From assembly GCF_032444005.1 (NCBI RefSeq), contig NC_091282.1:364126001-364190000 (forward strand): 64,000 nt of DNA. The letters run 5' to 3'. The notes beneath the pieces were generated by a model. It was not told the DNA's origin. It did no database searches and saw only the letters and a list, made by a program, of their open reading frames with translations. The stretch is from Ranitomeya imitator (lineage: Eukaryota). Positions 31,250-52,822 of this stretch are shown here, in pieces; the first letter of the stretch is position 1, and the number at the start of each line of letters is the position of its first letter. Both the position numbers and the translations under genes were made by a program.

Positions 31250-31327
31250 TTTTTTGGAAAATCTAAGCAAAATAACAACCGTTATATGGTACTGTAAAAC
31301 AAGGTAGAAGGTGTATATAAACTTCTT

Positions 31328-31830
31328 GAGAATTTAAATCTCCCTTTTTTGTGGGAGACTGAACCAAAACTCAGGCCCAGTGTATATAACATCGCAATCT
31401 AAGTGGCAGAAAGTGGCTGGCTGACATACGACAAACTAACAGAACTGAAGTATATCCACTTTGTGAGAATTTGAATCTCACTTTTTTGGGGGGAGACTGA
31501 ACCAAAGCTCAGGCCCTGTGCATAAAACAACACAATGTAAGTGGCAGAAAGTGGACTGGCTGATATACGACAAACTAACAGGACTGAAGTATATCCACTT
31601 TGTGAGAATTTGAATCTCCTTTTTTTTGGGGAGACTGAACCAAAACTCAGGCCCAGTGTATATAACAACGCAATCTGAGTGGCAGAAAGTGGCTGGCTGA
31701 CATACGACAAACTAACAGGACTGAAGTATGTCCACTTTGTGAGAATTTGAATCTCACTTTTTTGGGGGGAGCCTGAACCAAAACTCAGGCCCAGTGTATA
31801 AAACAACACAATGTAAGTGGCTGGAAGATA
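31328..31830. repeat. About 137-139 bp tandem array in the 5' region of hAT-C, about 3.6 units
   Basis: GAGAATTT.AATCTC.CTTTTTT..GGGAG.CTGAACCAAA.CTCAGGCCC at 31328, 31465, 31604 and 31741. Confidence 0.88.
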
Positions 31831-32238
31831 TTTGAAAAAATACAAGGACTGTAGTACAATTTCAATCTCCCTACAATGATCTCAGCAAAAGTATGGCAGC
31901 AATAAAAAGGACTGCTGCACACAAAAGTGTGGACAAATAAACAAGATAACTGTGCAGAAAGGAGCAACAGGATTTTTGCTTTTAAAAAAGCAGTTGGCTT
32001 GCACAGCAGTGTGCAAACAGCAATGCAGCTATCAGGGAGCCTTATAAGGCAGTCTAATAAGCTACAGAGATGTTGCACAACAATATAGCCTCCACTGTCC
32101 CTGCAAAAAAATGGTGGTGTTGGACAGTGGAAATCGCTACAGCAGAAGTAGTTTGGGGGTTAGTTTTCCCCCCCTAACTATATCCCTTCTTCTGATGAAG
32201 CTGCAGCAACCTCTCCCTATGCTAAGATTGGCAGAAGT

Positions 32239-32383
32239 AAGATGGCGGCCGGCATGCACGCCCCTTTATAGCCCCTTTGACGACGCAGAAAGCAAGCCAA
32301 TCACTGTCATGCCCTTCTGTAAGATGGTGGGGACCGAGACCTATGTCATCACGCTACCCACACTCTGCGTCCTCCTTCATTGG
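32239..32383 (-). promoter_or_regulatory. Putative transposase core promoter of hAT-C
   Basis: On the minus strand: CCAAT (32379-83), inverted CCAAT (32297-301), TATAAA (32265-70) and YY1 consensus GCCGCCATCTT (32239-49). It points toward the transposase ATG and is conserved with hAT-B. Confidence 0.55.
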
Positions 32384-32557
32384 CTGAAAAATGGTGCTAA
32401 AAGCGTCATATGAAATGCGACTTTTGCGCGCAGATCGCCGACCTCATGGCCGATCCCACACTACTAGAATCGGGTCGGGTTTCATGAAACCCGACTTTGC
32501 CGAAAGTCGGCGATTTTTGAATTTGTCCAATCCTTTCCACTCAACCCCAGTCCCGAC

Positions 32558-32934
32558 TCCTCCCGATGCCCTTGCTTGTGTGCATCACATGCACATTGCT
32601 GTGTGTGTGCACTGCTGATAGGCTGAGAGACTGCACCGCCCCACTGTAAATGCGGGAAAGAAAAAAAAATGGAGATCGGCGTTATTTCAGCACAGATCTA
32701 TCTCCCGCTCCCCTCCCCTGTCCACTATAGACTGAAACAGTCTATTAACAATGATAAACAGTTTTAATGTGCAAATCAAGTTAGGCTATTGGTGAACGAA
32801 CAGTTATCGAACAGAAACTCGAACAGTCGAATTTTAAGCAAATTGTTCGAGTTCGTGGAACGACTCGAACACCGCCCAAAATAGCTCGAATTTGAAATTG
32901 GCGAACAGTTCGATTCGAACAACGCTCATCTCTA
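32558..32934 (-). mobile_element. hAT terminal segment (continuation of the 23920-24770 element that hAT-C split)
   Basis: Dense TCGAAC/GTTCG subterminal motifs ending in CGCTCATCTCTA (reverse complement TAGAGATGAGCG) at 32934, followed by GTCCCAAG. Confidence 0.8.
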
Positions 32935-33093
32935 GTCCCAAGCAGAGACTGGGGTATTTGTCCATATTATTGCAATAAGCCAAACATCTCATAGGGTGGG
33001 CAGATAAAAGCCTTTACTTGCTTAAAAAATTGTAAGACTCATTTTAAGTCTGCCCAAAGACATGTAGGACACTCCACAAATGTATGGAAGAAG

Positions 33094-33880
33094 GTAACAT
33101 AGTAACATAGAAAAATAGTTAGCAAGGCCGAAAAAAGACATTTGTTCATCCAGTTCAGCCTATATTCTGTCAGAATAAATCCCCTGATCTACATCTTTCT
33201 AAAGAACCTAATAACTGTAAGATACAATATTGTTACGCTCCAGGAAGACATCCAGGCCTCTCTTGAACCCCTCAACTGAGTTCGCCATCACCACCTAATC
33301 AGGCACGGAATTCCAGATTCTGACTGCCCTAACAGTAAACAATACTCCAGATGCAGAGAATGCCCCCTTGTGATCATCACCTTCCTTGGTATAAACAGAT
33401 CCTCGGAGAGATATTTGTATTGTCCTCTTATATACTTACATATGGTTATTAGATCGCTTCTTAGTCATCTTTTTTCTAGACTGAATAATTCTAATTTTGC
33501 CAATCTCTCTGGGTATTGTAGTTTCCTCATCCCCTTTATGAATTTTGGTGCCCTCCTTCGTATTGCTCTAGTTCCGTTATAACCTTCCTGAGCACCGGTG
33601 CCCAAAACTGTACACAGTACTCCATGTGTGGTCTAACTAGGGATTTGTACAGAGGCAGTATAATGCTCTCATCATGTGTATCCAGACCTCTTGTAATGCA
33701 CTCCCTGATCCTGTTTGCCTTGGCAGCTGCTGCCTGGCACTGGCTGCTCCAGGTAAGTTTATCATTAACTAGGAACCCCATGTCCTTCTCATTGTCAGAT
33801 TCACCCAGTGGTTTCCCATTCAGTATGTAATGGTGACATTGATTCCTTCTACCCATGTGTATAACCTTACATTGACTGCA
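33094..33880 (-). mobile_element. CR1 LINE 3' fragment (copies at about 40647-41433, 48293-49079, 55939-56725)
   Basis: RT C-terminus HYILNGKPLGESDNEKDMGFLVNDKLTWSSQCQAAAAKANRI..CITRG...ILPLYKSLVRPHMEYCVQFWAP, with a (GTAACATA)n 3' tail. Confidence 0.88.
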
Positions 33881-33954
33881 TTACATTGCTTAGTATCATG
33901 TGCAAAAATAGATATTTTACTGTGCACACCTTCTACCCGATCGTTAATAAGTAT

Positions 33955-34387
33955 GTTGAAGATGCTGTGGTCAGACGTGACAAAAGTTAAATTGTTAGGT
34001 TAATGATATGCCTGGCGCCAAATCAACACAGGTGATCATCCCAAGAACACCATCCCCACAGTGAAACATGGTGGTGGTGGCATAATACCGTGAGGATGTT
34101 TTTGGCAGCATCGACATGGAAAATGGTCGAAGTCAAGGAGAAGATGAATAGTGTGAAATACAGGGATATCCTTTAGCAAAACCTGATTGTCTATCAGTTA
34201 TTTGAGATGGGGATGAAGGTTCACCTTCCAACAAGACAATGACCAAAAGCATACTGCTAAAGCAACACTTGAGTGGTTGAAGGGGAAACTTGTAAATGTT
34301 TTGGAGTGGTCTAGTCAACATAAATACCTTAATCCTATTGAGAATCTGTGGACAGACTTGAAGATTCTTGTTCACCAGAGGAAACCA
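33955..34387 (+). pseudogene. Tc1-like (DD34E) transposase fragment (copies at about 41508, 49154, 56800)
   Basis: Across frameshifts: LWSD.TK..L...PKNTIPTVKHGGG...GCF...MN...Y.DIL...FTFQQDND.KHTAK.T.EWL...NVLEW.SQ...LNPIENLW.DLK. Confidence 0.85.
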
Positions 34388-34682
34388 TCCACTCCATGGT
34401 CAAGCCTTATCTGGAATACTGTGTCTAGTTCTGGGGACAACACTTTAAAAAAGACATTGAAAAACTGGAGCAAGATAAGAGAAGAGTTACCAGTATGGTG
34501 AGCGGATTGTAAAGTATATCCTATGAGGATACAGGATTACAGGATATGGGAATGTTTAGCTTGCAAAAAAGAAGACTTAATAGATGTCTTCAAATATCTG
34601 AAGGGATATCACAGTGTAGAGGAATCATTCTTATTCTCTTTTGCCCATGAAAAACAAGAAGCAATGGAATGAAACTGAAAGT
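34388..34682 (+). mobile_element. Second CR1-clade LINE RT C-terminal fragment (copies at about 41941, 49587, 57233)
   Basis: Reads MVKPYLEYCV.FWGQHFKKDIEKLE...VTSMVSGL...SYE...DMGMFSLQKRRL...FKYLKG...RSNGMKL across frameshifts. Confidence 0.7.
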
Positions 34683-34687
34683 AATAT

Positions 34688-35303
34688 ACAGGGTGGTGTA
34701 CCATATTATGGGTGTCATGTCCGAGCATTCCTACATGAACAGTTGTCTGAAAAGTGGATTGGTCTTTGTGGACCCGTTGAATGGCCATCAAGGTCTCCCG
34801 ATTTGACCCCCTTAGACTTTTATCTTTGGGGTCATCTGAAGGCAATTGTCTATACTGTGAAGATACGAGATGTGCAGCATCTGAAACAACGGATACTGGA
34901 AGCCAGTGCTATCATTTCTACTGCAGTGTTGCTATCAGTGTGTCAAGAGTGGGAGAAGCGGGTTACATTGAAAATGCAACACAATGGTCAGCACTTTGAG
35001 CACATTGTATAAGTGGTAATAAACTTATAAATAACTCACGAAAGAATAAAGTTACATTAAAACCAAGCACACCATTGTTTTTCTTGTAAAATTCTCAATA
35101 AGTTTGATGTGTCACATGACCCTCTTCCCATTGGAAAAAATAAAGATGGATCCAAAATGGCTGACTTCAAAATGGCTGCCATGGTCAAAACCCATCTTGA
35201 AAAGCTTTCCTCCTCCCATATACTAATATACCACAAACAGGAAGTTGATATCACCAACCATTCCCATTTTATTTAGGTGTATCCATATAAATGTCCCACC
35301 CTG
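34688..35303 (+). mobile_element. Tc1/mariner-superfamily element 3' half, DD41D (rosa/Visitor)-like (copies at about 42241, 49887, 57533)
   Basis: Q(D>G)GVPYYG..VRAFL.EQ...KWIG..GPVEWPSRSPDLTPLDFYLWG.LK..VY...GQHFEHIV*, with about 40 residues between the second and third acidic positions. Ends in TIR-like GGTGTATCCATATAAATGTCCCACCCTG. Confidence 0.72.
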
Positions 35304-35837
35304 TGCAATGTTATCAGTAATATAATTTAAAGTAAAAACTTGTAACATAAAAAACAAAATGGTAAAATGCCCTGCCAAAATATTAATTTGTTTTTTATTA
35401 GAATATGTAAAAAAAATCACATTATGCCTACACATTTTGGAACTGTGAATTTGTGTAATTTATTTTGTCTAGTTTTTGGTGATTTTATGGTGTGTTTTTT
35501 ATTTGTACCTTTTTCTTAATTTTAAAATTTATTTTAAATGTTTTTGCCTGTTTTTTATGTTTACCATTGTGAGTGGAGTTGAGAGTTTCCAAATGTTTTA
35601 GATTGATTTATCATTTGCAACCTGAAAAAAAGCTGCAAAGTTTGTTGCAAATGTACATTTTCCCACATAGTGATTTTATGTACATCAGAAACATTTTGCA
35701 AAAATGTGTAACTTTTTGCACTAAAAATAATAAAAATGATTCTTGACTTTGCCCATGATTCATTAATGTACATCATTATGAGGAACTTGGTGCAAAAAAA
35801 GTATACCACAAGGCAAAAAAAGAAAAGTGAGGAAGAA

Positions 35838-36430
35838 GAAGAAGCCAGTGGCAAAACGTGCGTTGGGATGAGAGGACGTTACTCCAGGATCCTGACTACA
35901 AGGTGAATCGGTCTCCTATTATTGCGGACACGATCCTTACTACTTACGGGCACTTTCTTTGATTCTATCTAAAGTTATTTGGTGGGTTACTTCTCACTAG
36001 TAGATATTACTATACAAACTGTTGGGCCAAGCATTGTATACATGTTGCCATTTTTACGTGTGGTATGCATAATACGTTTCAGTATTCTCCTTGCACTCCC
36101 GCGTTATCTGATCGATATTATACCTTTATTCGCTATGGCTGTGATCTAATCATTTAATTCATTACTCATATTGAGGTAGTTACTAAGCAAATGACCGAAA
36201 CGTTTTGATATTGTGATATGTGAAGCACTAGTCACTTTATAGGGGCTACCAGTTTTGCAAGTTTGTGATTCAGTCCTACTTAAGCATTCAAATATTGTAC
36301 CTCTACGGAGTGTTAGTTTCGGGTAGCCTGGACCGTCCTCTATGTGAAGCACACTGCTATGTTATTTTTTATTCTTGCATTTTAAATCTTTATGAATAAA
36401 AGTTAATTTTTAACCTTCCTTTTGTACCTT
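35838..36430 (+). mobile_element. Probable Penelope pLTR remnant (copies at about 43391, 51037, 58683)
   Basis: Starts with a decayed hammerhead 3' half GAAGAAGCCAGTGGCAAAACGTGCGTTGGG (compare 8015-8043). A splice donor AAG|GTGAAT follows at 35902, then an AT-rich tail with AATAAA. Same layout as 8007-8518. Confidence 0.5.
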
Positions 36431-36638
36431 AAATGGGATGCGTTTATAACATCTTTTAATATATTGTATGTGATTTTTCCAAAAATTTTAACTTTTTACT
36501 TTTGCATCCCATATAGCTTAAATAAGTTTTTTATCTTCAATTAGTTCATCTGTAACTGTTTTCATTATTTTTACTTAAGGAAAGTACGGTAAATGGGGTG
36601 AGAGAATTTGAAGATGGGGACAAGCGTTTATCACTTAA

Positions 36639-37255
36639 GGTACCTTCACACATAACGATATCGTTAACGATATCGTTGCTTTTTGTGACGTAGCAACGAT
36701 ATCATTAAGGAAATCGCTATGTGTGACAGCGACCAACGATCAGGCCCCTGCTGTGATGTCGTTGGTCGCTGAACAAAGTCCAGAACTTTATTTCGTTGCT
36801 GGATCTCCCGTGGACATCGCTGGATCGGCGTGTGTGACACCGATCCAGCGATGTCTTCACTGGTAACCAGGGTAAACATCGGGTTACTAAGCGCAGGGCC
36901 GCGCTTAGTAACCCGATGTTTACCCTGGTTACCAGCGTAAAAGTAAAAAAAAAAAAACACTACATACTTACCTACCGCTGTCTGTCCCCGGCGCTGTGCT
37001 CTGCACTCCGCCTGCACTGGCTGTGAGCGTCGGTCAGCCGGAAAGCAGAGCGGTGACGTCACCGCTCTGCTTTCCGACCGCTGTGCTCACAGCCAGTACA
37101 GGAGGAGTGCAGAGAAGCAGAGCGCCGGGGACAGACAGCGGTAGGTAAGTATGTAGAGCTGTCTGTGTGACAGCTCTGCAGCGACCAAACAGCGACGCTG
37201 CAGCGATCCGGATCGTTGTCGGTATCGCTGCAGCGTCGCTTAATGTGAAGGGGCC
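36639..37255. mobile_element. Kolobok/T2-type palindromic MITE, copy 1 (617 bp)
   Basis: TTAA|GGTACCTTCACA ... TGTGAAGGGGCC|TTTA. Internal long palindromes, e.g. GGTAACCAGGGTAAACATCGGGTTACTAAGCGC..GCGCTTAGTAACCCGATGTTTACCCTGGTTACC. Confidence 0.85.
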
Positions 37256-37542
37256 TTTACTATACTGTATATTCAGGTTCTGAAATTATCCCAATAAGGC
37301 CACATAGTCATAAATGTTTCATTTTGTATCTCAAAATACGTTCCATGTCAGTAATTAGTAATTCAGTCTCCATTTTTTATTAGACATATATGGTTATATG
37401 GTATATGGTTACACAATTGTTAAGAAATTATATAGTATGTTTACTTCTATATAGCATGTTTACTTTACTTTGGAATGTGCTTATATGCTTTAAGAAATTT
37501 GTTAAGAGGTCATATCTGCCACAAATAAATTATTTGGTTCTT

Positions 37543-38574
37543 CTACCCCAAAGTTTTTTTTATAGCTGTCTTCATCTCTTTATTTCGCAAGGTATAAATG
37601 ATTGGGTTCAGCATTGGTGATATGACTGTGTAGAACACCATAACCACCTCATCAGCCTGAAAAGTTTTGGAGGGTCTCATATAAATAAAAACACAAGGTC
37701 CAAAGAAAAAAGTTACCACTGTAAGATGAGAAGCACAGGTTGAAAAGGCTTTGCGTCGTCCTTCCACTGTTCGTATTTTAAAGATAGCCTTAGCAATGCC
37801 AATATAGGAAATTAAGACAGTCAGAAAGCAGCCTAGTGATACGATACCACTATTGGCCACTATCATAGCATCAATCATGGCTGTATCAGTGCATGCAAGC
37901 CTGATTAATGGTGGGACATCGCAAAAAAAACTGTTAATTTCATTTGGGCCACAGAATGGCAAACCCATTGTTAGTGTTGTCTGGATGTTAGAATGAACAA
38001 AACCAATAGCCCAAGTTGCTGCCACCATCCATAGACAAAGCTGTTTACTCATTATGGTGGAATATTGCAAGGGTTTGCATATAGCTACATAGCGATCATA
38101 TGCCATAGCTGTGAAAAGAAAACATTCTGCACAGGCGAAGAAGTGGAAGAAGTATAGTTGAGTGATGCAGCCATTGAATGTAATAGTTTTTCTTTTAAAA
38201 AAAAAATCAATCAACATCTTGGGTACAGTTACACTCGAGTAACAGAGATCAATGAAAGAGAGCTTACCAAGGAAGAAATACATTGGATTATGAAGACGAT
38301 AATCTGCTCTGATGGTCAACATGATTAAAATGTTCCCGCTGAGAAGTAATATATAGGCCAACAGAAAGATGGAAAAGACAAAGTACTGAAGTCTTGGATT
38401 AAAAGCAAAAATCACAAAAACAAATTCTGTTACTTCTGTTATGTTACATGTCTCCACAGTAGACTTTAAAGAACTGGATTTCGTAGCATCTACATGATGA
38501 TCCGATACGTTATAAAATGAGTCCAGTCCCCCAAAGTTTATCGACAAAGGTTCTACTGTACAGTTGTGCCACAT
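37543..38574 (-). CDS. Olfactory receptor, class II (family 4-like), copy 1, 343 aa, altered C-terminus
   Basis: Single-exon 7TM ORF with SGN, LHNPMYFFL, MAYDRYVAICKPLQY, FFCD.PPL..LAC, ISY, KAFSTCASHL and PMLNPIIYTLRN. An extra base in a T run gives ...IKKTLG* instead of ...IKKLWGRRTK*. Confidence 0.93.
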   Translation of the reverse strand: MWHNCTVEPLSINFGGLDSFYNVSDHHVDATKSSSLKSTVETCNITEVTEFVFVIFAFNPRLQYFVFSIFLLAYILLLSGNILIMLTIRADYRLHNPMYFFLGKLSFIDLCYSSVTVPKMLIDFFFKRKTITFNGCITQLYFFHFFACAECFLFTAMAYDRYVAICKPLQYSTIMSKQLCLWMVAATWAIGFVHSNIQTTLTMGLPFCGPNEINSFFCDVPPLIRLACTDTAMIDAMIVANSGIVSLGCFLTVLISYIGIAKAIFKIRTVEGRRKAFSTCASHLTVVTFFFGPCVFIYMRPSKTFQADEVVMVFYTVISPMLNPIIYTLRNKEMKTAIKKTLG

Positions 38575-41500
38575 AGTTGAAAAGAAAAAATGTGTAAATC
38601 TAATGGATTAAAATGTAAAACTCCTTTTTTATTTTGTGCTTGTCCATCAAAAAGAACCATGTAGACAGCCTAACATCTTTAGAAAAAGTAAGATAAACAT
38701 TGATAAATCAGTTATTTAGCTAAAAGAATTAACTAGATAATAGATACAAAATCAACAAATGTTAAAACTAGTAAAGAACCTACAATTTACCATGTATATA
38801 GGAAGAATTTATTATTTTGACCTCACAATCTTATACTTTAGTATTGTCACTCGATGTATATTTTCAGTGATCCCACCACGGATATTTCTTAGTTTTTTTA
38901 CTTATAAATGTTTAAAAAAAAGCTGGAAAAATTGTAAAAATATTAAGTGGTAGTGGCACAAAAATTTACATATAAAATATAAAAATGGAAATTCAGCAGT
39001 ATAAACATAGAGACAAGCGAAACACAACAAAATTATGATGTTTCAAAATTGTACCTTTGGAGACAAATACATGAACAGATCCAGCAAGAGTCCCCTTTCA
39101 CACTTACAATGTTCTCATACATGTTCTATCCGTGTTTGTCTATTGGGCTGTTTAGTGAAAAGCAAATTGGTGACATTCTAATTGCAGTCTGACTTTCATA
39201 GGGGAATTTCATAGGATTTTTTTCATATGTGAATACTAATGAAAGATTTAACACACGCATGCACGCACACACACGCACACACACGTAGTTTGTACCCACC
39301 ACGAGTACAGTTTTTTGGGGGGAGCCTGAACCAAAACTCAGGCCCAGTGTATAAAACAACACAATGTAAGTGGCTGGAAGATATTTGAAAAAATACAAGG
39401 ACTGTAGTACAATTTCAATCTCCCTACAATGATCTCAGCAAAAGTATGGCAGCAATAAAAAGGACTGCTGCACACAAAAGTGTGGACAAATAAACAAGAT
39501 AACTGTGCAGAAAGGAGCAACAGGATTTTTGCTTTTAAAAAAGCAGTTGGCTTGCACAGCAGTGTGCAAACAGCAATGCAGCTATCAGGGAGCCTTATAA
39601 GGCAGTCTAATAAGCTACAGAGATGTTGCACAACAATATAGCATCCACTGTCCCTGCAAAAAAATGGTGGTGTTGGACAGTGGAAATCGCTACAGCAGAA
39701 GTAGTTTGGGGGTTAGTTTTCCCCCCCTAACTATATCCCTTCTTCTGATGAAGCTGCAGCAACCTCTCCCTATGCTAAGATTGGCAGAAGTAAGATGGCG
39801 GCCGGCATGCACGCCCCTTTATAGCCCCTTTGACGACGCAGAAAGCAAGCCAATCACTGTCATGCCCTTCTGTAAGATGGTGGGGACCGAGACCTATGTC
39901 ATCACGCTACCCACACTCTGCGTCCTCCTTCATTGGCTGAAAAATGGTGCTAAAAGCGTCATATGAAATGCGACTTTTGCGCGCAGATCGCCGACCTCAT
40001 GGCCGATCCCACACTACTAGAATCGGGTCGGGTTTCATGAAACCCGACTTTGCCGAAAGTCGGCGATTTTTGAATTTGTCCAATCCTTTCCACTCAACCC
40101 CAGTCCCGACTCCTCCCGATGCCCTTGCTTGTGTGCATCACATGCACATTGCTGTGTGTGTGCACTGCTGATAGGCTGAGAGACTGCACCGCCCCACTGT
40201 AAATGCGGGAAAGAAAAAAAAATGGAGATCGGCGTTATTTCAGCACAGATCTATCTCCCGCTCCCCTCCCCTGTCCACTATAGACTGAAACAGTCTATTA
40301 ACAATGATAAACAGTTTTAATGTGCAAATCAAGTTAGGCTATTGGTGAACGAACAGTTATCGAACAGAAACTCGAACAGTCGAATTTTAAGCAAATTGTT
40401 CGAGTTCGTGGAACGACTCGAACACCGCCCAAAATAGCTCGAATTTGAAATTGGCGAACAGTTCGATTCGAACAACGCTCATCTCTAGTCCCAAGCAGAG
40501 ACTGGGGTATTTGTCCATATTATTGCAATAAGCCAAACATCTCATAGGGTGGGCAGATAAAAGCCTTTACTTGCTTAAAAAATTGTAAGACTCATTTTAA
40601 GTCTGCCCAAAGACATGTAGGACACTCCACAAATGTATGGAAGAAGGTAACATAGTAACATAGAAAAATAGTTAGCAAGGCCGAAAAAAGACATTTGTTC
40701 ATCCAGTTCAGCCTATATTCTGTCAGAATAAATCCCCTGATCTACATCTTTCTAAAGAACCTAATAACTGTAAGATACAATATTGTTACGCTCCAGGAAG
40801 ACATCCAGGCCTCTCTTGAACCCCTCAACTGAGTTCGCCATCACCACCTAATCAGGCACGGAATTCCAGATTCTGACTGCCCTAACAGTAAACAATACTC
40901 CAGATGCAGAGAATGCCCCCTTGTGATCATCACCTTCCTTGGTATAAACAGATCCTCGGAGAGATATTTGTATTGTCCTCTTATATACTTACATATGGTT
41001 ATTAGATCGCTTCTCAGTCATCTTTTTTCTAGACTGAATAATTCTAATTTTGCCAATCTCTCTGGGTATTGTAGTTTCCTCATCCCCTTTATGAATTTTG
41101 GTGCCCTCCTTTGTATTGCTCTAGTTCCGTTATAACCTTCCTGAGCACCGGTGCCCAAAACTGTACACAGTACTCCATGTGTGGTCTAACTAGGGATTTG
41201 TACAGAGGCAGTATAATGCTCTCATCATGTGTATTTAGACCTCTTGTAATGCACTCCCTGATCCTGTTTGCCTTGGCAGCTGCTGCCTGGCACTGGCTGC
41301 TCCAGGTAAGTTTATCATTAACTAGGAACCCCATGTCCTTCTCATTGTCAGATTCACCCAGTGGTTTCCCATTCAGTATGTAATGGTGACATTGATTCCT
41401 TCTACCCATGTGTATAACCTTACATTGACTGCATTACATTGCTTAGTATCATGTGCAAAAGTAGATATTTTACTGTGCACACCTTCTACCCGATCGTTAA

Positions 41501-44191
41501 TAAGTATGTTGAAGATGCTGTGGTCAGACGTGACAAAAGTTAAATTGTTAGGTTAATGATATGCCTGGCGCCAAATCAACACAGGTGATCATCCCAAGAA
41601 CACCATCCCCACAGTGAAACATGGTGGTGGTGGCATAATACCGTGAGGATGTTTTCGGCAGCATCGACATGGAAAATGGTCGAAGTCAAGGAGAAGATGA
41701 ATAATGTGAAATACAGGGATATCCTTTAGCAAAACCTGATTGTCTATCAGTTATTTGAGATGGGGATGAAGGTTCACCTTCCAACAAGACAATGACCAAA
41801 AGCATACTGCTAAAGCAACACTTGAGTGGTTGAAGGGGAAACTTGTAAATGTTTTGGAGTGGTCTAGTCAACATAAATACCTTAATCCTATTGAGAATCT
41901 GTGGACAGACTTGAAGATTCTTGTTCACCAGAGGAAACCATCCACTCCATGGTCAAGCCTTATCTGGAATACTGTGTCTAGTTCTGGGGACAACACTTTA
42001 AAAAAGACATTGAAAAACTGGAGCAAGATAAGAGAAGAGTTACCAGTATGGTGAGCGGATTGTAAAGTATATCCTATGAGGATACAGGATTACAGGATAT
42101 GGGAATGTTTAGCTTGCAAAAAAGAAGACTTAATAGATGTCTTCAAATATCTGAAGGGATATCACAGTGTAGAGGAATCATCCTTATTCTCTTTTGCCCA
42201 TGAAAAACAAGAAGCAATGGAATGAAACTGAAAGTAATATACAGGGTGGTGTACCATATTATGGGTGTCAGGTCCGAGCATTCCTACATGAACAGTTGTC
42301 TGAAAAGTGGATTGGTCTTTGTGGACTCATTGAATGGCCATCAAGGTCTCCCGATTTGACCCCCTTAGACTTTTATCTTTGGGGTCATCTGAAGGCAATT
42401 GTCTATACTGTGAAGATACGAGATGTGCAGCATCTGAAACAACGGATACTGGAAGCCAGTGCTATCATTTCTACTGCAGTGTTGCTATCAGTGTGTCAAG
42501 AGTGGGAGAAGCGGGTTACATTGAAAATGCAACACAATGGTCAGCACTTTGAGCACATTGTATAAGTGGTAATAAACTTATAAATAACTCACCAAAGAAT
42601 AAAGTTACATTAAAACCAAGCACACCATTGTTTTTCTTGTAAAATTCTCAATAAGTTTGATGTGTCACATGACCCTCTTCCCATTGGAAAAAATAAAGAT
42701 GGATCCAAAATGGCTGACTTCAAAATGGCTGCCATGGTCAAAACCCATCTTGAAAAGCTTTCCTCCTCCCATATACTAATATACCACAAACAGGAAGTTG
42801 ATATCACCAAACATTCCCATTTTATTTAGGTGTATCCATATAAATGTCCCACCCTGTGCAATGTTATCAGTAATATAATTTAAAGTAAAAACTTGTAACA
42901 TAAAAAACAAAATTGTAAAATGCCCTGCCAAAATATTAATTTGTTTTTTATTAGAATATGTAAAAAAAATCACATTGTGCCTACACATTTTGGAACTGTG
43001 AATTTGTGTAATTTATTTTGTCTAGTTTTTGGTGATTTTATGGTGTGTTTTTTATTTGTACCTTTTTCTTAATTTTAAAATGTATTTTAAATGTTTTTGC
43101 CTGTTTTTTATGTTTACCATTGTGAGTGGAGTTGAGAGTTTCCAAATGTTTTAGATTGATTTATCATTTGCAACCTGAAAAAAAGCTGCAAAGTTTGTTG
43201 CAAATGTACATTTTCCCACATAGTGATTTTATGTACATCAGAAACATTTTGCAAAAATGTGTAACTTTTTGCACTAAAAATAATAAAAATGATTCTTGAC
43301 TTTGCCCATGATTCATTAATGTACATCATTATGAGGAACTTGGTGCAAAAAAAGTATACCACAAGGCAAAAAAAGAAAAGTGAGGAAGAAGAAGAAGCCA
43401 GTGGCAAAACGTGCGTTGGGATGAGAGGACGTTACTCCAGGATCCTGACTACAAGGTGAATCGGTCTCCTATTATTGCGGACACGATCCTTACTACTTAC
43501 GGGCACTTTCTTTGATTCTATCTAAAGTTATTTGGTGGGTTACTTCTCACTAGTAGATATTACTATACAAACTGTTGGGCCAAGCATTGTATACATGTTG
43601 CCATTTTTACGTGTGGTATGCATAATACGTTTCAGTATTCTCCTTGCACTCCCGCGTTATCTGATCGATATTATACCTTTATTCGCTATGGCTGTGATCT
43701 AATCATTTAATTCATTACTCATATTGAGGTAGTTGCTAAGCAAATGACCGAAACGTTTTGATATTGTGATATGTGAAGCACTAGTCACTTTATAGGGGCT
43801 ACCAGTTTTGCAAGTTTGTGATTCAGTCCTACTTAAGCATTCAAATATTGTACCTCTACGGAGTGTTAGTTTCGGGTAGCCTGGACCGTCCTCTATGTGA
43901 AGCACACTGCTATGTTATTTTTTATTCTTGCATTTTAAATCTTTATGAATAAAAGTTAATTTTTAACCTTCCTTTTGTACCTTAAATGGGATGCGTTTAT
44001 AACATCTTTTAATATATTGTATGTGATTTTTCCAAAAATGTTAACTTTTTACTTTTGCATCCCATATAGCTTAAATAAGTTTTTTATCTTCAATTAGTTC
44101 ATCTGTAACTGTTTTCATTATTTTTACTTAAGGAAAGTACGGTAAATGGGGTGAGAGAATTTGAAGATGGGGACAAGCGTTTATCACTTAA

Positions 44192-44902
44192 GGTACCTTC
44201 ACACATAACGATATCGTTAACGATATCGTTGCTTTTTGTGACGTAGCAACGATATCATTAAGGAAATCGCTATGTGTGACAGCGACCAACGATCAGGCCC
44301 CTGCTGTGATGTCGTTGGTCGCTGAACAAAGTCCAGAACTTTATTTCGTTGCTGGATCTCCCGTGGACCGATCCAGCGATGTCTTCACTGGTAACCAGGG
44401 TAAACATCGGGTTACTAAGCGCAGGGCCGCGCTTAGTAACCCGATGTTTACCCTGGTTACCAGCGTAAAAGTAAAAAAAAAAAAACACTACATACTTACC
44501 TACCGCTGTCTGTCCCCGGCGCTGTGCTCTGCACTCCGCCTGCACTGGCTGTGAGCGTCGGTCAGCCGGAAAGCAGAGCGGTGACGTCACCGCTCTGCTT
44601 TCCGGCCGCTGTGCTCACAGCCAGTACAGGAGGAGTGCAGAGAAGCAGAGCGCCGGGGACAGACAGCGGTAGGTAAGTATGTAGTGTTTGTTTTTTTTTT
44701 ACTTTTATGCTGGTAACCAGGGTAAACATTGGGTTACTAAGTGCGGCCCTGGGCTTAGTAACCCGATGTTTACCCTGGTTACCGGCATCGTTGGTCGCTG
44801 TAGAGCTGTCTGTGTGACAGCTCTGCAGCGACCAAACAGCGACGCTGCAGCGATCCGGATCGTTGTCGGTATCGCTGCAGCGTCGCTTAATGTGAAGGGG
44901 CC
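44192..44902. mobile_element. Kolobok/T2-type MITE, copy 2 (711 bp)
   Basis: Same TTAA/GGTACCTTCACA...TGTGAAGGGGCC/TTTA termini. Retains the second internal palindrome. Confidence 0.85.
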
Positions 44903-45176
44903 TTTACTATACTGTATATTCAGGTTCTGAAATTATCCCAATAAGGCCACATAGTCATAAATGTTTCATTTTGTATCTCAAAATACGTTCCATGTCAGTA
45001 ATTAGTAATTCAGTCTCCATTTTTTATTAGACATATATGGTTATATGGTATATGGTTACACAATTGTTAAGAAATTATATAGTATGTTTACTTCTATATA
45101 GCATGTTTACTTTACTTTGGAATGTGCTTATATGCTTAAAGAAATTTGTTAAGAGGTCATATCTGCCACAAATAAA

Positions 45177-46220
45177 TTATTTGGTTCTTCTACCCCAAAG
45201 TTTTTTTATAGCTGTCTTCATCTCTTTATTTCGCAAGGTATAAATGATTGGGTTCAGCATTGGTGATATGACTGTGTAGAACACCATAACCACCTCATCA
45301 GCCTGAAAAGTTTTGGAGGGTCTCATATAAATAAAAACACAAGGTCCAAAGAAAAAAGTTACCACTGTAAGATGAGAAGCACAGGTTGAAAAGGCTTTGC
45401 GTCGTCCTTCCACTGTTCGTATTTTAAAGATAGCCTTAGCAATGCCAATATAGGAAATTAAGACAGTCAGAAAGCAGCCTAGTGATACGATACCACTATT
45501 GGCCACTATCATAGCATCAATCATGGCTGTATCAGTGCATGCAAGCCTGATTAATGGTGGGACATCGCAAAAAAAACTGTTAATTTCATTTGGGCCACAG
45601 AATGGCAAACCCATTGTTAGTGTTGTCTGGATATTAGAATGAACAAAACCAATAGCCCAAGTTGCTGCCACCATCCATAGACAAAGCTGTTTACTCATTA
45701 TGGTGGAATATTGCAAGGGTTTGCATATAGCTACATAGCGATCATATGCCATAGCTGTGAAAAGAAAACATTCTGCACAGGCGAAGAAGTGGAAGAAGTA
45801 TAGTTGAGTGATGCAGCCATTGAATGTAATAGTTTTTCTTTTAAAAAAAAAATCAATCAACATCTTGGGTACAGTTACACTCGAGTAACAGAGATCAATG
45901 AAAGAGAGCTTACCAAGGAAGAAATACATTGGATTATGAAGACGATAATCTGCTCTGATGGTCAACATGATTAAAATGTTCCCGCTGAGAAGTAATATAT
46001 AGGCCAACAGAAAGATGGAAAAGACAAAGTACTGAAGTCTTGGATTAAAAGCAAAAATCACAAAAACAAATTCTGTTACTTCTGTTATGTTACATGTCTC
46101 CACAGTAGACTTTAAAGAACTGGATTTCGTAGCATCTACATGATGATCCGATACGTTATAAAATGAGTCCAGTCCCCCAAAGTTTATCGACAAAGGTTCT
46201 ACTGTACAGTTGTGCCACAT
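45177..46220 (-). CDS. Olfactory receptor, class II (family 4-like), copy 2, 347 aa
   Basis: All OR motifs intact; protein identical to copies 3 and 4. Confidence 0.95.
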   Translation of the reverse strand: MWHNCTVEPLSINFGGLDSFYNVSDHHVDATKSSSLKSTVETCNITEVTEFVFVIFAFNPRLQYFVFSIFLLAYILLLSGNILIMLTIRADYRLHNPMYFFLGKLSFIDLCYSSVTVPKMLIDFFFKRKTITFNGCITQLYFFHFFACAECFLFTAMAYDRYVAICKPLQYSTIMSKQLCLWMVAATWAIGFVHSNIQTTLTMGLPFCGPNEINSFFCDVPPLIRLACTDTAMIDAMIVANSGIVSLGCFLTVLISYIGIAKAIFKIRTVEGRRKAFSTCASHLTVVTFFFGPCVFIYMRPSKTFQADEVVMVFYTVISPMLNPIIYTLRNKEMKTAIKKLWGRRTK

Positions 46221-49200
46221 AGTTGAAAAGAAAAAATGTGTAAATCTAATGGATTAAAATGTAAAACTCCTTTTTTATTTTGTGCTTGTCCATCAAAAAG
46301 AACCATGTAGACAGCCTAACATCTTTAGAAAAAGTAAGATAAACATTGATAAATCAGTTATTTAGCTAAAAGAATTAACTAGATAATAGATACAAAATCA
46401 ACAAATGTTAAAACTAGTAAAGAACCTACAATTTACCATGTATATAGGAAGAATTTATTATTTTGACCTCACAATCTTATACTTTAGTATTGTCACTCGA
46501 TGTATATTTTCAGTGATCCCACCACGGATATTTCTTAGTTTTTTTACTTATAAATGTTTAAAAAAAAGCTGGAAAAATTGTAAAAATATTAAGTGGTAGT
46601 GGCACAAAAATTTACATATAAAATATAAAAATGGAAATTCAGCAGTATAAACATAGAGACAAGCGAAACACAACAAAATTATGATGTTTCAAAATTGTAC
46701 CTTTGGAGACAAATACATGAACAGATCCAGCAAGAGTCCCCTTTCACACTTACAATGTTCTCATACATGTTCTATCCGTGTTTGTCTATTGGGCTGTTTA
46801 GTGAAAAGCAAACTGGTGACATTCTAATTGCAGTCTGACTTTCATAGGGGAATTTCATAGGATTTTTTTCATATGTGAATACTAATGAAAGATTTAACAC
46901 ACGCATGCACGCACACACACGCACACACACGTAGTTTGTACCCACCACGAGTACAGTTTTTTGGGGGGAGCCTGAACCAAAACTCAGGCCCAGTGTATAA
47001 AACAACACAATGTAAGTGGCTGGAAGATATTTGAAAAAATACAAGGACTGTAGTACAATTTCAATCTCCCTACAATGATCTCAGCAAAAGTATGGCAGCA
47101 ATAAAAAGGACTGCTGCACACAAAAGTGTGGACAAATAAACAAGATAACTGTGCAGAAAGGAGCAACAGGATTTTTGCTTTTAAAAAAGCAGTTGGCTTG
47201 CACAGCAGTGTGCAAACAGCAATGCAGCTATCAGGGAGCCTTATAAGGCAGTCTAATAAGCTACAGAGATGTTGCACAACAATATAGCCTCCACTGTCCC
47301 TGCAAAAAAATGGTGGTGTTGGACAGTGGAAATCGCTACAGCAGAAGTAGTTTGGGGGTTAGTTTTCCCCCCCTAACTATATCCCTTCTTCTGATGAAGC
47401 TGCAGCAACCTCTCCCTATGCTAAGATTGGCAGAAGTAAGATGGCGGCCGGCATGCACGCCCCTTTATAGCCCCTTTGACGACGCAGAAAGCAAGCCAAT
47501 CACTGTCATGCCCTTCTGTAAGATGGTGGGGACCGAGACCTATGTCATCACGCTACCCACACTCTGCGTCCTCCTTCATTGGCTGAAAAATGGTGCTAAA
47601 AGCGTCATATGAAATGCGACTTTTGCGCGCAGATCGCCGACCTCATGGCCGATCCCACACTACTAGAATCGGGTCGGGTTTCATGAAACCCGACTTTGCC
47701 GAAAGTCGGCGATTTTTGAATTTGTCCAATCCTTTCCACTCAACCCCAGTCCCGACTCCTCCCGATGCCCTTGCTTGTGTGCATCACATGCACATTGCTG
47801 TGTGTGTGCACTGCTGATAGGCTGAGAGACTGCACCGCCCCACTGTAAATGCGGGAAAGAAAAAAAAATGGAGATCGGCGTTATTTCAGCACAGATCTAT
47901 CTCCCGCTCCCCTCCCCTGTCCACTATAGACTGAAACAGTCTATTAACAATGATAAACAGTTTTAATGTGCAAATCAAGTTAGGCTATTGGTGAACGAAC
48001 AGTTATCGAACAGAAACTCGAACAGTCGAATTTTAAGCAAATTGTTCGAGTTCGTGGAACGACTCGAACACCGCCCAAAATAGCTCGAATTTGAAATTGG
48101 CGAACAGTTCGATTCGAACAACGCTCATCTCTAGTCCCAAGCAGAGACTGGGGTATTTGTCCATATTATTGCAATAAGCCAAACATCTCATAGGGTGGGC
48201 AGATAAAAGCCTTTACTTGCTTAAAAAATTGTAAGACTCATTTTAAGTCTGCCCAAAGACATGTAGGACACTCCACAAATGTATGGAAGAAGGTAACATA
48301 GTAACATAGAAAAATAGTTAGCAAGGCCGAAAAAAGACATTTGTTCATCCAGTTCAGCCTATATTCTGTCAGAATAAATCCCCTGATCTACATCTTTCTA
48401 AAGAACCTAATAACTGTAAGATACAATATTGTTACGCTCCAGGAAGACATCCAGGCCTCTCTTGAACCCCTCAACTGAGTTCGCCATCACCACCTAATCA
48501 GGCACGGAATTCCAGATTCTGACTGCCCTAACAGTAAACAATACTCCAGATGCAGAGAATGCCCCCTTGTGATCATCACCTTCCTTGGTATAAACAGATC
48601 CTCGGAGAGATATTTGTATTGTCCTCTTATATACTTACATATGGTTATTAGATCGCTTCTCAGTCATCTTTTTTCTAGACTGAATAATTCTAATTTTGCC
48701 AATCTCTCTGGGTATTGTAGTTTCCTCATCCCCTTTATGAATTTTGGTGCCCTCCTTTGTATTGCTCTAGTTCCGTTATAACCTTCCTGAGCACCGGTGC
48801 CCAAAACTGTACACAGTACTCCATGTGTGGTCTAACTAGGGATTTGTACAGAGGCAGTATAATGCTCTCATCATGTGTATTTAGACCTCTTGTAATGCAC
48901 TCCCTGATCCTGTTTGCCTTGGCAGCTGCTGCCTGGCACTGGCTGCTCCAGGTAAGTTTATCATTAACTAGGAACCCCATGTCCTTCTCATTGTCAGATT
49001 CACCCAGTGGTTTCCCATTCAGTATGTAATGGTGACATTGATTCCTTCTACCCATGTGTATAACCTTACATTGACTGCATTACATTGCTTAGTATCATGT
49101 GCAAAAGTAGATATTTTACTGTGCACACCTTCTACCCGATCGTTAATAAGTATGTTGAAGATGCTGTGGTCAGACGTGACAAAAGTTAAATTGTTAGGTT

Positions 49201-51837: not shown

Positions 51838-52548
51838 GGTACCTTCACACATAACGATATCGTTAACGATATCGTTGCTTTTTGTGACGTAGCAACGATA
51901 TCATTAAGGAAATCGCTATGTGTGACAGCGACCAACGATCAGGCCCCTGCTGTGATGTCGTTGGTCGCTGAACAAAGTCCAGAACTTTATTTCGTTGCTG
52001 GATCTCCCGTGGACCGATCCAGCGATGTCTTCACTGGTAACCAGGGTAAACATCGGGTTACTAAGCGCAGGGCCGCGCTTAGTAACCCGATGTTTACCCT
52101 GGTTACCAGCGTAAAAGTAAAAAAAAAAAAACACTACATACTTACCTACCGCTGTCTGTCCCCGGCGCTGTGCTCTGCACTCCGCCTGCACTGGCTGTGA
52201 GCGTCGGTCAGCCGGAAAGCAGAGCGGTGACGTCACCGCTCTGCTTTCCGGCCGCTGTGCTCACAGCCAATACAGGAGGAGTGCAGAGAAGCAGAGCGCC
52301 GGGGACAGACAGCGGTAGGTAAGTATGTAGTGTTTGTTTTTTTTTTACTTTTATGCTGGTAACCAGGGTAAACATCGGGTTACTAAGTGCGGCCCTGGGC
52401 TTAGTAACCCGATGTTTACCCTGGTTACCGGCATCGTTGGTCGCTGTAGAGCTGTCTGTGTGACAGCTCTGCAGCGACCAAACAGCGACGCTGCAGCGAT
52501 CCGGATCGTTGTCGGTATCGCTGCAGCGTCGCTTAATGTGAAGGGGCC
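51838..52548. mobile_element. Kolobok/T2-type MITE, copy 3
   Basis: Same termini and TSD as copy 2. Confidence 0.85.
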
Positions 52549-52822
52549 TTTACTATACTGTATATTCAGGTTCTGAAATTATCCCAATAAGGCCACATAG
52601 TCATAAATGTTTCATTTTGTATCTCAAAATACGTTCCATGTCAGTAATTAGTAATTCAGTCTCCATTTTTTATTAGACATATATGGTTATATGGTATATG
52701 GTTACACAATTGTTAAGAAATTATATAGTATGTTTACTTCTATATAGCATGTTTACTTTACTTTGGAATGTGCTTATATGCTTAAAGAAATTTGTTAAGA
52801 GGTCATATCTGCCACAAATAAA

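What the first reader, a model, noticed from the sequence alone, without database searches (positions are those of the whole stretch)
38575..39936. The duplication placed a hAT transposase promoter in sense orientation upstream of OR copies 1-3
Seen: each unit starts with the 5' end of hAT-C. It carries a minus-strand CCAAT / CCAAT / TATAAA / YY1 (GCCGCCATCTT) cluster at 39792-39936, repeated at +7646 and +15292. The cluster is conserved in order and spacing in the diverged hAT-B (23855-23919) and originally points at the transposase ATG. In the array it instead points at the OR of the preceding unit, about 1.25 kb away on the same strand. Copies 1-3 keep only about 740 bp of native upstream DNA; only copy 4 keeps the native flank. 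Inference: copies 1-3 may be TE-promoter-driven chimeric genes expressed outside olfactory neurons (e.g. germline or skin), or may escape normal OR choice.
Basis: partly seen in the sequence, partly recalled or inferred. Interest (0 to 1): 0.8.

Follow-up and report, generated by a model that had tools for sequence, protein, structure and literature searches.

The report
Dead transposon's promoter copied beside smell-receptor genes
In a poison-frog chromosome a recent four-fold tandem duplication of an olfactory receptor gene has placed the promoter end of a dead hAT transposon 1.2 kb upstream of three of the four copies; the layout is real and the promoter looks genuine, but nothing shows that it drives the receptor genes.

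Summary
The window comes from Ranitomeya imitator (assembly aRanImi1). It carries a four-unit tandem array at 31755-62250, with units of 7553, 7646, 7646 and 7646 bp that are 99.1-99.9% identical. Each unit contains one intact OR4E2-like gene on the minus strand.

The three junctions are identical. Each joins a point 737 bp upstream of the OR ATG to a point inside the 138-bp repeat array in the 5' leader of a degenerate hAT element, hAT-C (24771-32934). As a result, units 2-4 each begin with 1176 bp of the hAT 5' end.

The motif cluster reads on the minus strand as inverted CCAAT at -54, TATAAA at -27, and CCATCTT (a YY1/initiator-like site) at +1. It is identical in all four copies. The proximal 66 nt is conserved without indels in hAT-B: 89% identical, against 76% for the rest of the leader.

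New support for a real promoter comes from ATG counts. The sense strand from this site to the transposase ATG is almost free of ATG (2 in 3272 nt in hAT-B; 0 in the first 416 nt in hAT-C), as a true 5' leader would be.

The functional inference is untested and looks unlikely. Both hAT copies are dead. A read-through leader would be 1222 nt long with 16 upstream ATGs, and the hAT part has no strong splice donor. The 120-170 nt just upstream of the OR, which is alignable with a distant frog, is kept in every copy. I rate this a bystander juxtaposition of modest interest.

The parts
31755..62250 (.). Four-unit head-to-tail tandem array. Units are 31755-39311, 39312-46957, 46958-54603 and 54604-62250.
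   Evidence: Self-BLAST at 99.1-99.9% identity. Offset scan gives periods of 7553 and 7646 bp. Each unit has private substitutions, so the units are distinct copies.
39311..39312 (.). Duplication junction (also at 46957/46958 and 54603/54604). OR upstream DNA is joined to the inside of the hAT-C leader repeat array, with about 2 nt of microhomology.
   Evidence: Five-way alignment of the hAT-C original, the three junctions and the array end.
37543..38574 (-). OR copy 1 (OR4E2-like, 343 aa). A 1-bp insertion at 37554 changes the last residues.
   Evidence: Pfam 7tm_4 at E = 2.9e-55; alignment of the four copies; indel list.
45177..46220 (-). OR copy 2 (347 aa). Copies 3 (52823-53866) and 4 (60469-61512) encode the same protein.
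   Evidence: The closest relatives are dendrobatid OR4E2-like proteins at 94% and 90% identity.
38575..39311 (-). The 737 bp of native OR upstream DNA kept by copies 1-3. The proximal 120-170 nt still aligns with a distant frog. It contains 15 of the 16 upstream ATGs and a GTAAGT at 39107.
39312..40487 (-). Duplicated 5' terminal fragment of hAT-C (also 46958-48133 and 54604-55779). It holds the 5' TIR, the subterminal region, the promoter-like cluster and 485 nt of leader.
   Evidence: TIR TAGAGATGAGCG at 40476-40487. The fragment is 99.7% identical to 31755-32934. Only two substitutions occur among the four copies.
39792..39936 (-). Promoter-like cluster (also at 32239-32383, 47438-47582 and 55084-55228). 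Minus-strand features are CCAAT at 39936-39932, inverted CCAAT at 39854-39850, TATAAA at 39823-39818 and GCCGCCATCTT at 39802-39792. The putative +1 is the A at 39796.
   Evidence: Sequence read directly; motif counts against shuffles; conservation in hAT-B.
24771..32934 (-). hAT-C, the donor element. It has 12-nt TIRs matching at 11 of 12 positions, flanking octamers GTCCCGAC and GTCCCAAG (6 of 8), a transposase ATG near 31250, and a heavily disrupted coding region.
31251..32243 (-). hAT-C 5' leader from the putative +1 to the transposase ATG, including a 138-bp x 3.7 repeat array (31313-31821). It is depleted of sense-strand ATG.
   Evidence: 4 ATG against 16.2 expected, with none in the first 416 nt. 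The 552-nt ATG-free run is bounded by CATG at -10 to -12. Repeat array.
23857..23919 (-). The same inverted-CCAAT, TATAAA and CCATCTT core in the older copy hAT-B (left TIR at 12247, transposase ATG at 20589). Spacing is identical. hAT-B is truncated immediately upstream of the CCAAT box.
20590..23861 (-). hAT-B 5' leader of 3272 nt, mostly tandem repeats. It has only 2 sense-strand ATG, against 56 on the other strand.

Best explanation
This is a young tandem segmental duplication of a 7.6-kb segment, seen here only in Ranitomeya imitator.

How it arose. The first event joined a point 737 bp upstream of an OR4E2-like gene to a point inside the tandem-repeat part of the 5' leader of a neighbouring dead hAT transposon. 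The 2-nt microhomology points to end-joining or template switching rather than homologous recombination. Unequal crossing-over between the units then raised the copy number to four.

What it produced. OR copies 1-3 each have 1176 bp of the hAT 5' end about 1.2 kb upstream on the same strand. This fragment comprises the TIR, the subterminal region, the element's own TATA, YY1-type initiator and CCAAT core promoter, and 485 nt of its ATG-free leader.

What is shown and what is inferred. The geometry is shown. The motif cluster being the hAT family's genuine promoter is inferred with good support. Whether it fires today is unknown. My best reading is that the hAT fragment is a passenger of the duplication. 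If the OR copies are expressed, they probably use the retained proximal region and locus-level control as copy 4 does. Any transcription from the hAT promoter would mostly yield long, poorly translatable upstream transcripts.
For: Geometry and junctions.

Recency and lineage specificity:
- Units are 99.1-99.9% identical.
- The orthologous OR has no second OR gene within 10 kb on either side in Phyllobates terribilis, R. variabilis and Dendrobates tinctorius.

Promoter identity:
- The first T of TATAAA lies 27 nt upstream of the A of CCATCTT, and an inverted CCAAT lies at -54 to -58.
- The exact 11-mer occurs only in hAT copies.
- The 66-nt core is 89.4% identical to hAT-B with no indel, against 76.2% for the remaining leader (Fisher P = 0.009). 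21 of the 22 motif positions are kept (P about 0.02-0.05).
- The four longest minus-strand ATG-free runs in the whole window all cover hAT leader sequence or its upstream continuation: 2972, 697, 552 and 548 nt (the 548-nt run occurs twice). The longest plus-strand run is 328 nt.
- There is no ATG depletion between the putative start site and the TIR (11 observed, 12.3 expected).

Passenger reading:
- hAT-C has at least 9 in-frame stops and 3 frame changes.
- A read-through leader would be 1222 nt with 16 upstream ATGs and AATAAA at 38813 and 38633.
- The hAT-derived leader has no GTRAG donor.
- The proximal 120-170 nt that aligns with frog contigs L001/L002 is kept by all copies.
- In mouse, a few hundred bp upstream of an OR start site suffices as a minimal promoter, and OR promoters are AT-rich without CpG islands (PMC3247239).
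Against: - No transcript, start-site or methylation data could be obtained, so neither activity nor inactivity of the hAT promoter is shown.
- Only two independent hAT copies could be compared. In hAT-B the ATG-free stretch continues upstream of the cluster into another repeat array, so the upstream boundary of the leader is defined only in hAT-C.
- Tandem repeats inflate the ATG statistic. The non-repeat parts give P about 0.001-0.0025 and are homologous to each other.
- The native OR promoter has not been located. It may lie beyond the 737-bp breakpoint, in which case copies 1-3 would depend on something else.
- The GTAAGT at 39107 could let a hAT-initiated transcript splice towards the OR.
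- An older R. imitator assembly shows only one called OR in that neighbourhood. The copy number may therefore be polymorphic, collapsed in that assembly, or over-expanded in this one.
Confidence: 0.6

Rival explanations
1. The hAT promoter is active and produces chimeric transcripts that read or splice into OR copies 1-3. That would give those copies expression outside olfactory neurons, or exempt them from normal OR choice.
For: - The promoter lies in the same orientation about 1.2 kb upstream, intact and identical in all copies.
- The core promoter architecture is strong and its leader is ATG-free.
- hAT elements make up about 1.1 Gbp of this genome, so the family was highly active (PMC12822217).
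- GTAAGT at 39107 and CAG acceptor-like sites offer possible splicing routes.
- Copies 1-3 lack everything beyond 737 bp of native flank.
Against: - The donor element is long dead.
- An unspliced leader would carry 16 upstream ATGs and two poly(A) hexamers.
- The hAT part has no strong donor.
- NCBI models all four ORs as CDS-only single exons.
- No transcript evidence was obtainable.
Confidence: 0.12
2. The breakpoint removed the native OR promoter or a required upstream element. Copies 1-3 are then transcriptionally silent or weak duplicates on their way to becoming pseudogenes, and only copy 4 is a normally regulated gene.
For: - Only 737 bp of native flank is retained.
- Mammalian OR start sites are often kilobases upstream of the coding exon (general knowledge; OR promoter studies as in PMC3247239).
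- No O/E-like site with one mismatch or fewer lies in the 737 bp, while two lie in the copy-4-only flank.
- Copy 1 already has a C-terminal frameshift.
Against: - The O/E counts are at chance level, with about 1 expected in 2.5 kb.
- The upstream block that aligns with distant frogs is proximal, within 170 nt of the ATG, and is retained.
- The ORFs of copies 2-4 are identical and intact, although they are too young for this to show selection.
Confidence: 0.2
3. The motif cluster is a chance co-occurrence of short motifs in hAT subterminal DNA and is not a promoter.
For: - CCAAT and TATAAA are short and common.
- Only two independent copies are available.
- CpG richness upstream of the cluster is a general property of hAT subterminal regions. 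The 3' ends also have observed/expected CpG of 0.93, so it gives no support.
Against: - About 0.03 exact 11-mer matches are expected in 64 kb (my own estimate), and about 0.5 with one mismatch allowed.
- The TATA-to-initiator spacing is canonical and identical in both copies.
- The core is significantly better conserved than the leader.
- The ATG-free sense strand starts 10 nt upstream of the putative +1 in hAT-C.
Confidence: 0.1
4. The four-copy array is partly an assembly artefact or a polymorphic copy-number variant, not a fixed feature of the species.
For: The older R. imitator assembly has one OR on a 30-kb contig. It shows no second OR among the called genes nearby and a V-set Ig gene 3-8 kb upstream. 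Units 2-4 are 99.9% identical.
Against: Every unit carries private substitutions, and units 3 and 4 share derived ones, as expected for real paralogous copies. The older contig may be collapsed or may end near the gene.
Confidence: 0.1

Closest known systems
TE-derived alternative promoters and TE-gene chimeric transcripts (for example LTR- or L1-initiated host transcripts)
   Same: A transposon's own promoter lies upstream of a host coding exon in the same orientation, so it could initiate a chimeric transcript.
   Different: Here the juxtaposition arose by tandem duplication of host DNA through a pre-existing dead DNA transposon, not by a new insertion. No chimeric transcript has been demonstrated. 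Known cases mostly involve retroelements with strong promoters (general knowledge).
Human LINE-1 5' UTR internal promoter with its YY1 site
   Same: This is a transposon promoter that uses a YY1 motif close to the start site. In L1 that site is required for accurate initiation (Athanikar et al. 2004, as cited in PMC3286893). YY1 motifs generally sit at or just downstream of start sites (PMC10979970).
   Different: In L1 the motif reads AAGATGGCC on the sense strand, a few nt downstream of +1, with no TATA box (recalled from memory, not checked here). Here the sense strand reads CCATCTT, which is the initiator-type orientation, 27 nt downstream of a TATA box. The element is a hAT DNA transposon.
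hAT superfamily elements with long untranslated leaders (for example maize Ac)
   Same: A BED plus hAT-dimerisation transposase, short TIRs, CpG-containing subterminal repeats, and a promoter several hundred bp inside the 5' end followed by a long leader (the Ac comparison is from general knowledge).
   Different: The leader here carries variable tandem-repeat arrays. It reaches 1.0 kb in hAT-C and 3.3 kb in hAT-B while remaining almost ATG-free. Both copies in the window are dead.
Birth-and-death evolution of olfactory receptor genes by tandem duplication
   Same: A recent lineage-specific tandem expansion gave near-identical OR paralogues. One of them already carries a frameshift at the C-terminal tail.
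   Different: The unit boundary lies close to the gene (737 bp upstream) and inside a transposon leader, so three copies have a changed upstream context.
Mouse OR promoters (AT-rich, with O/E and homeodomain sites, some with TATA, and no CpG islands; PMC3247239)
   Same: The retained native upstream DNA is AT-rich (31% GC), like OR promoter regions.
   Different: The hAT core is GC-rich (53-56% GC) and has a TATA/YY1/CCAAT architecture, unlike known OR promoters. No O/E site was found in the retained 737 bp.

Membership tests
hAT superfamily DNA transposon | Transposase with the hAT C-terminal dimerisation domain | tested here: met
   PF05699 at E = 9.3e-12 in ORF 17015-18631 (hAT-B). The homologous region in hAT-C was found by tblastn.
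hAT superfamily DNA transposon | BED zinc finger in the N-terminal part | tested here: met
   PF02892 at E = 2.7e-10 in ORF 18995-20464 and at E = 4.6e-06 in ORF 11350-12087.
hAT superfamily DNA transposon | Short terminal inverted repeats | tested here: met
   TAGAGTTGAGCG at 24771 (+) and TAGAGATGAGCG at 32934 (-), matching at 11 of 12 positions. TAGGGTTGAGCG at 12247.
hAT superfamily DNA transposon | 8-bp target site duplication | tested here: inconclusive
   The flanking octamers are GTCCCGAC and GTCCCAAG, matching at 6 of 8 positions. An alternative degenerate 5' end near 32517 cannot be excluded.
hAT superfamily DNA transposon | Intact transposase ORF (autonomous copy) | tested here: not met
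   hAT-B is split over four reading-frame pieces. hAT-C has at least 9 in-frame stops and 3 frame changes.
Vertebrate olfactory receptor (class A GPCR, OR family 4-like) | 7tm_4 domain across the protein, an intact single-exon ORF and the MAYDRYVAIC motif | tested here: met
   7tm_4 at 188-190 bits. Four open ORFs contain MAYDRYVAICKPLQY. The best relatives are named OR4E2-like.
RNA polymerase II TATA plus initiator core promoter | TATA box about 25-31 nt upstream of an initiator A, with the arrangement conserved between copies | tested here: met
   TATAAA at 39823-39818 and the A of CCATCTT at 39796, a distance of 27 nt. The same spacing is seen in hAT-B (23888 and 23861). The initiator matches YYANWYY except at +3 (read directly).
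RNA polymerase II TATA plus initiator core promoter | Transcripts actually start there | not testable with these tools
   No frog transcript or CAGE data can be reached. The only indirect support is the strand-specific ATG-free leader.
TE-promoter-driven chimeric gene | TE promoter upstream of the host gene in the same orientation | tested here: met
TE-promoter-driven chimeric gene | A transcript that initiates in the TE and contains the host coding sequence | not testable with these tools
   DNA for all frog assemblies was unavailable. NCBI gene ranges equal the CDS.
TE-promoter-driven chimeric gene | A plausible mature mRNA (splice donor in the TE exon or a short, open leader) | tested here: not met
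   There is no GTRAG donor in 39796-39312. The unspliced leader would be 1222 nt with 16 upstream ATGs.

The most novel reading that the evidence does not exclude
The duplicated hAT 5' end acts as a working TATA/YY1 promoter. It would give three of four newly born OR paralogues a non-olfactory or choice-independent expression pattern, for example in germline, embryo or skin. That would be promoter capture by tandem duplication through a dead DNA transposon, and a route by which the hAT burst in this frog genome rewires chemoreceptor genes.
Probability: 0.1. Interest if true: 0.55.

Novelty: new member of a known kind. Interest (0 to 1): 0.3.

Why it matters
If the hAT promoter were active, this locus would be a clean natural experiment. 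It holds four near-identical OR genes, three with a transposon promoter upstream and one with the native flank, and they can be told apart by a few SNPs and by the junction sequence. That would allow a direct test of how upstream context affects OR choice and ectopic expression in an amphibian. It would also show that dead DNA transposons can donate promoters through segmental duplication. As things stand, it documents an ordinary recent OR tandem duplication with an unusual breakpoint. It also gives a sequence-level definition of the promoter and ATG-free leader of a hAT lineage found in Ranitomeya; hAT elements as a whole make up about 1.1 Gbp of the R. imitator genome.

Tried and rejected
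1. Fetching orthologous or paralogous frog DNA to compare more hAT 5' ends and OR upstream regions. This covered Phyllobates, R. variabilis, D. tinctorius, the older R. imitator assembly and three hAT-bearing contigs. Every look-up returned gene tables but no DNA because the sample files are too large.

2. CpG content as evidence of a germline-unmethylated promoter. Observed/expected CpG is 1.03 from the cluster to the TIR and 0.06 in the leader. However, the 3' subterminal 400 bp of both hAT copies also score 0.93. High CpG is therefore a property of hAT ends, and I dropped the argument.

3. A leader intron that could donate a splice donor to the OR. No GTRAG donor exists in the hAT-derived part. 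The ATG depletion also extends across the repeat arrays, which argues that they stay in the mature leader.

4. Scans for O/E and homeodomain sites to locate the native OR promoter gave chance-level counts.

5. Substitutions among the four copies as a readout of CpG mutation. Only two substitutions fall in the hAT fragment, which is too few.

6. An Rfam scan of the whole window found no family at gathering score.

7. Plus-strand orientation of the promoter, because AAGATGGCGGC reads that way as in L1. I rejected this because TATA would then lie downstream and the ATG-free strand is the minus strand.

8. Two Logan contigs from another frog (L001, L002) align only to the OR and about 120-170 nt upstream. 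They say nothing about start sites.
Full report
**Source of the window.** The OR proteins encoded here are found exactly in NCBI assembly GCA_032444005.1, on a 1.25-Gb chromosome. A preprint names that assembly aRanImi1.pri, Ranitomeya imitator. The closest named proteins are OR4E2-like receptors of Phyllobates terribilis (94%) and Anomaloglossus baeobatrachus (90%). The hAT pieces match Ranitomeya proteins at up to 98%.

**Check of the observation: the array.** An offset scan and a self-BLAST show a head-to-tail array from 31755 to 62250. Its four units are 7553, 7646, 7646 and 7646 bp long and 99.1-99.9% identical. A five-way alignment of the three junctions, the hAT-C original and the array end shows one identical junction (...GAGTACAGTT|TTTTGGGGGG) at 39311/39312, 46957/46958 and 54603/54604. 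The parental sequences share about two bases there. Each unit holds one minus-strand ORF with a full 7tm_4 domain. The four proteins are identical except that a 1-bp insertion at 37554 alters the last residues of copy 1. Copies 1-3 keep 737 bp of native DNA upstream of the ATG (38575-39311 and its paralogues). Copy 4 alone runs on into unduplicated flank.

**Check of the observation: the hAT fragment.** The DNA after each junction is the 5' end of a hAT element:
- The neighbouring copy hAT-B encodes zf-BED and Dimer_Tnp_hAT domains on the minus strand.
- 12-nt TIRs lie at 24771 (+) and at 32934, 40487, 48133 and 55779 (-).
- hAT-C therefore spans 24771-32934, flanked by octamers that match at 6 of 8 positions.
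- Units 2-4 each begin with 1176 bp of its 5' end.

**Check of the observation: the motifs.** Three corrections apply:
- The original cluster at 32239-32383 is a fourth instance.
- Homology with hAT-B stops at 23919/32301, immediately upstream of the CCAAT box, so the distal CCAAT is not conserved.
- The CCAAT at 39850-39854 is inverted relative to the transposase.

**Is the cluster a promoter?** Four lines of evidence bear on this.
1. Architecture. On the minus strand, TATAAA starts 27 nt upstream of the A of CCATCTT (39796), and the inverted CCAAT lies at -54 to -58. This is a canonical TATA-plus-initiator layout with a YY1-type initiator.
2. Chance. The 11-mer with up to one mismatch is expected 0.5 times in the window. 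It occurs five times, always in hAT copies, which represent two independent copies.
3. Conservation. hAT-B and hAT-C are about 78% identical over the shared leader. The 66-nt core is 89.4% identical with no indel, against 76.2% for the rest (Fisher P = 0.009). 21 of the 22 motif positions are kept (P about 0.02-0.05).
4. ATG depletion, which is new here. The sense strand between this site and the transposase ATG is nearly devoid of ATG.
   - hAT-B has 2 ATG in 3272 nt, against 56 on the opposite strand and 57.5 +/- 7.1 in shuffles.
   - hAT-C has 4 in 993 nt against 16.2 expected, and none in the first 416 nt.
   - Upstream of the putative start site, towards the TIR, there is no depletion (11 observed, 12.3 expected).
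   - The four longest minus-strand ATG-free runs in the whole window all cover hAT leader sequence or its upstream continuation: 2972, 697, 552 and 548 nt (the 548-nt run occurs twice). The longest plus-strand run is 328 nt.
   - In hAT-C the run is bounded by a CATG at -10 to -12.

This pattern is what selection against upstream start codons leaves in a real 5' leader. It also fixes the direction of transcription as the minus strand.

**Caveats on the promoter evidence.** The repeats inflate the ATG counts. The non-repeat parts alone give P about 0.001-0.0025, and they are homologous to each other. In hAT-B the ATG-free stretch continues upstream of the cluster into a 107-bp repeat array. CpG richness upstream of the cluster looked like a further argument. 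It is not one, because the 3' ends of both elements are equally CpG-rich.

**What the duplication did.** The breakpoint on the hAT side lies inside the 138-bp x 3.7 repeat array of the leader. The transposase ATG and coding region were therefore left behind. What was copied is the TIR, the subterminal region, the core promoter and 485 nt of leader. In units 2-4 this block points at the OR of the preceding unit. The putative +1 at 39796 is 1222 nt from the OR ATG at 38574.

**Age of the array.** The array is young.
- The orthologous OR has no second OR within 10 kb on either side in Phyllobates, R. variabilis and D. tinctorius.
- An older R. imitator assembly shows a single OR among the genes called nearby on a 30-kb contig, with a V-set Ig gene 3-8 kb upstream. 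This is either a collapse or a copy-number polymorphism.
- Unit 1 differs from units 2-4 by 0.8% over its first 5.4 kb but by only 0.1-0.3% over the last 2.1 kb. Units 2-4 differ by about 0.1%. This pattern suggests a first duplication followed by later unequal crossing-over or gene conversion.

**Does the hAT promoter drive the ORs?** This could not be tested. No frog DNA or transcripts could be retrieved, and NCBI's models for the four genes are CDS-only. The sequence gives mild evidence against:
- hAT-C is long dead, with at least 9 in-frame stops and 3 frame changes. hAT-B is also broken.
- An unspliced hAT-to-OR leader would carry 16 upstream ATGs, 15 of them in the native 737 bp, and AATAAA at 38813 and 38633.
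- The hAT-derived leader has no GTRAG donor. The only strong donor-like site (GTAAGT at 39107) lies in native DNA.
- The only upstream block that still aligns with a distant frog (Logan contigs L001/L002, 84-85% identical over the OR region) is the 120-170 nt next to the ATG. All copies retain it.
- In mouse, a few hundred bp at the start site suffice as a minimal OR promoter, and OR promoters are AT-rich without CpG islands (PMC3247239). The GC-rich TATA/YY1 core is a different kind of promoter.

Two points weigh the other way. The native OR start site is unknown and could lie beyond the breakpoint. hAT elements were enormously successful in this genome, at about 1.1 Gbp (PMC12822217).

**Comparison with known systems.** The locus is a member of two ordinary classes: a recent tandem OR duplication and a nest of decayed hAT elements. 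It resembles TE-derived alternative promoters, but the defining feature, a TE-initiated transcript containing the host CDS, is untested. One supporting feature, a plausible mature mRNA, is not met. The use of a YY1 motif at the start site recalls the L1 5' UTR (PMC3286893; PMC10979970), but with the opposite motif orientation and with a TATA box.

**Verdict.** The functional part is open and, on balance, unlikely (about 10%). Interest is modest. The locus would be a convenient natural experiment if transcript data showed the hAT start site in use.

Noticed in passing
20590-23861 (hAT-B) and 31251-32243 (hAT-C), minus strand: The hAT 5' leaders contain tandem-repeat arrays of different unit length and copy number (41-277 bp units in hAT-B, 138 bp in hAT-C). 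They stay almost free of sense-strand ATG over up to 3.3 kb. This implies that the repeats are part of the mature leader and that their expansion is tolerated.
   Followed up: partly
38449-38574, minus strand (and paralogues): The OR lacks the usual start Met just before the N-glycosylation motif; the corresponding codon reads GTG. The ORF instead starts about 42 codons upstream. The same 347-aa form is annotated in Phyllobates, Anomaloglossus, Dendrobates and R. variabilis. Other frogs have forms of 305-334 aa.
   Followed up: partly
37554: Copy 1 has a 1-bp insertion that replaces the last 7 residues with 3, giving 343 aa instead of 347. It is the only coding difference among the four copies.
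   Followed up: yes
31755-37156 versus 37152-39311: Unit 1 is 0.8% diverged from units 2-4 over its first 5.4 kb but only 0.1-0.3% over the OR-containing last 2.1 kb. This suggests two rounds of duplication, or gene conversion or unequal crossing-over within the OR part.
   Followed up: partly
44390-44783 (and 52036-52429, 59682-60075); unit 1 around 37151: A roughly 390-bp near-palindromic stretch (arms 92% complementary) lies about 400 bp downstream of each OR stop. It may be a foldback or MITE-like element. Unit 1 lacks 119 bp of it (missing after 37151, against 44680-44798 in unit 2) and has a separate 25-bp insertion at 36814-36838.
   Followed up: no
1-24770: This region is a nest of same-orientation hAT copies. 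The left TIR of hAT-B at 12247 interrupts the coding region of a third copy (BED ORF at 11350-12087). hAT-B lacks its 5' terminus beyond 23919. The 107-bp repeats at 23986-24609 resemble the 114-bp repeats at 5532-6201 and 8519-8770 (67-72% identity). The order of insertions and rearrangements was not resolved.
   Followed up: partly
Proteins P0125-P0149 (older R. imitator annotation): Many gene models in the older R. imitator annotation fuse pieces of this hAT transposase to unrelated host domains such as tetraspanin, peptidase M14, pyruvate kinase and kinases. This is either annotation artefact or widespread exonisation of hAT fragments.
   Followed up: no
38575-38745, minus strand; L002 positions 220-391: About 120-170 nt immediately upstream of the OR ATG still aligns with Logan contigs from another frog. 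That contig has a TAATTAATTG homeodomain-like site and a TATTTAAAG about 150-180 nt upstream of its ATG. The R. imitator counterpart is degenerate.
   Followed up: partly
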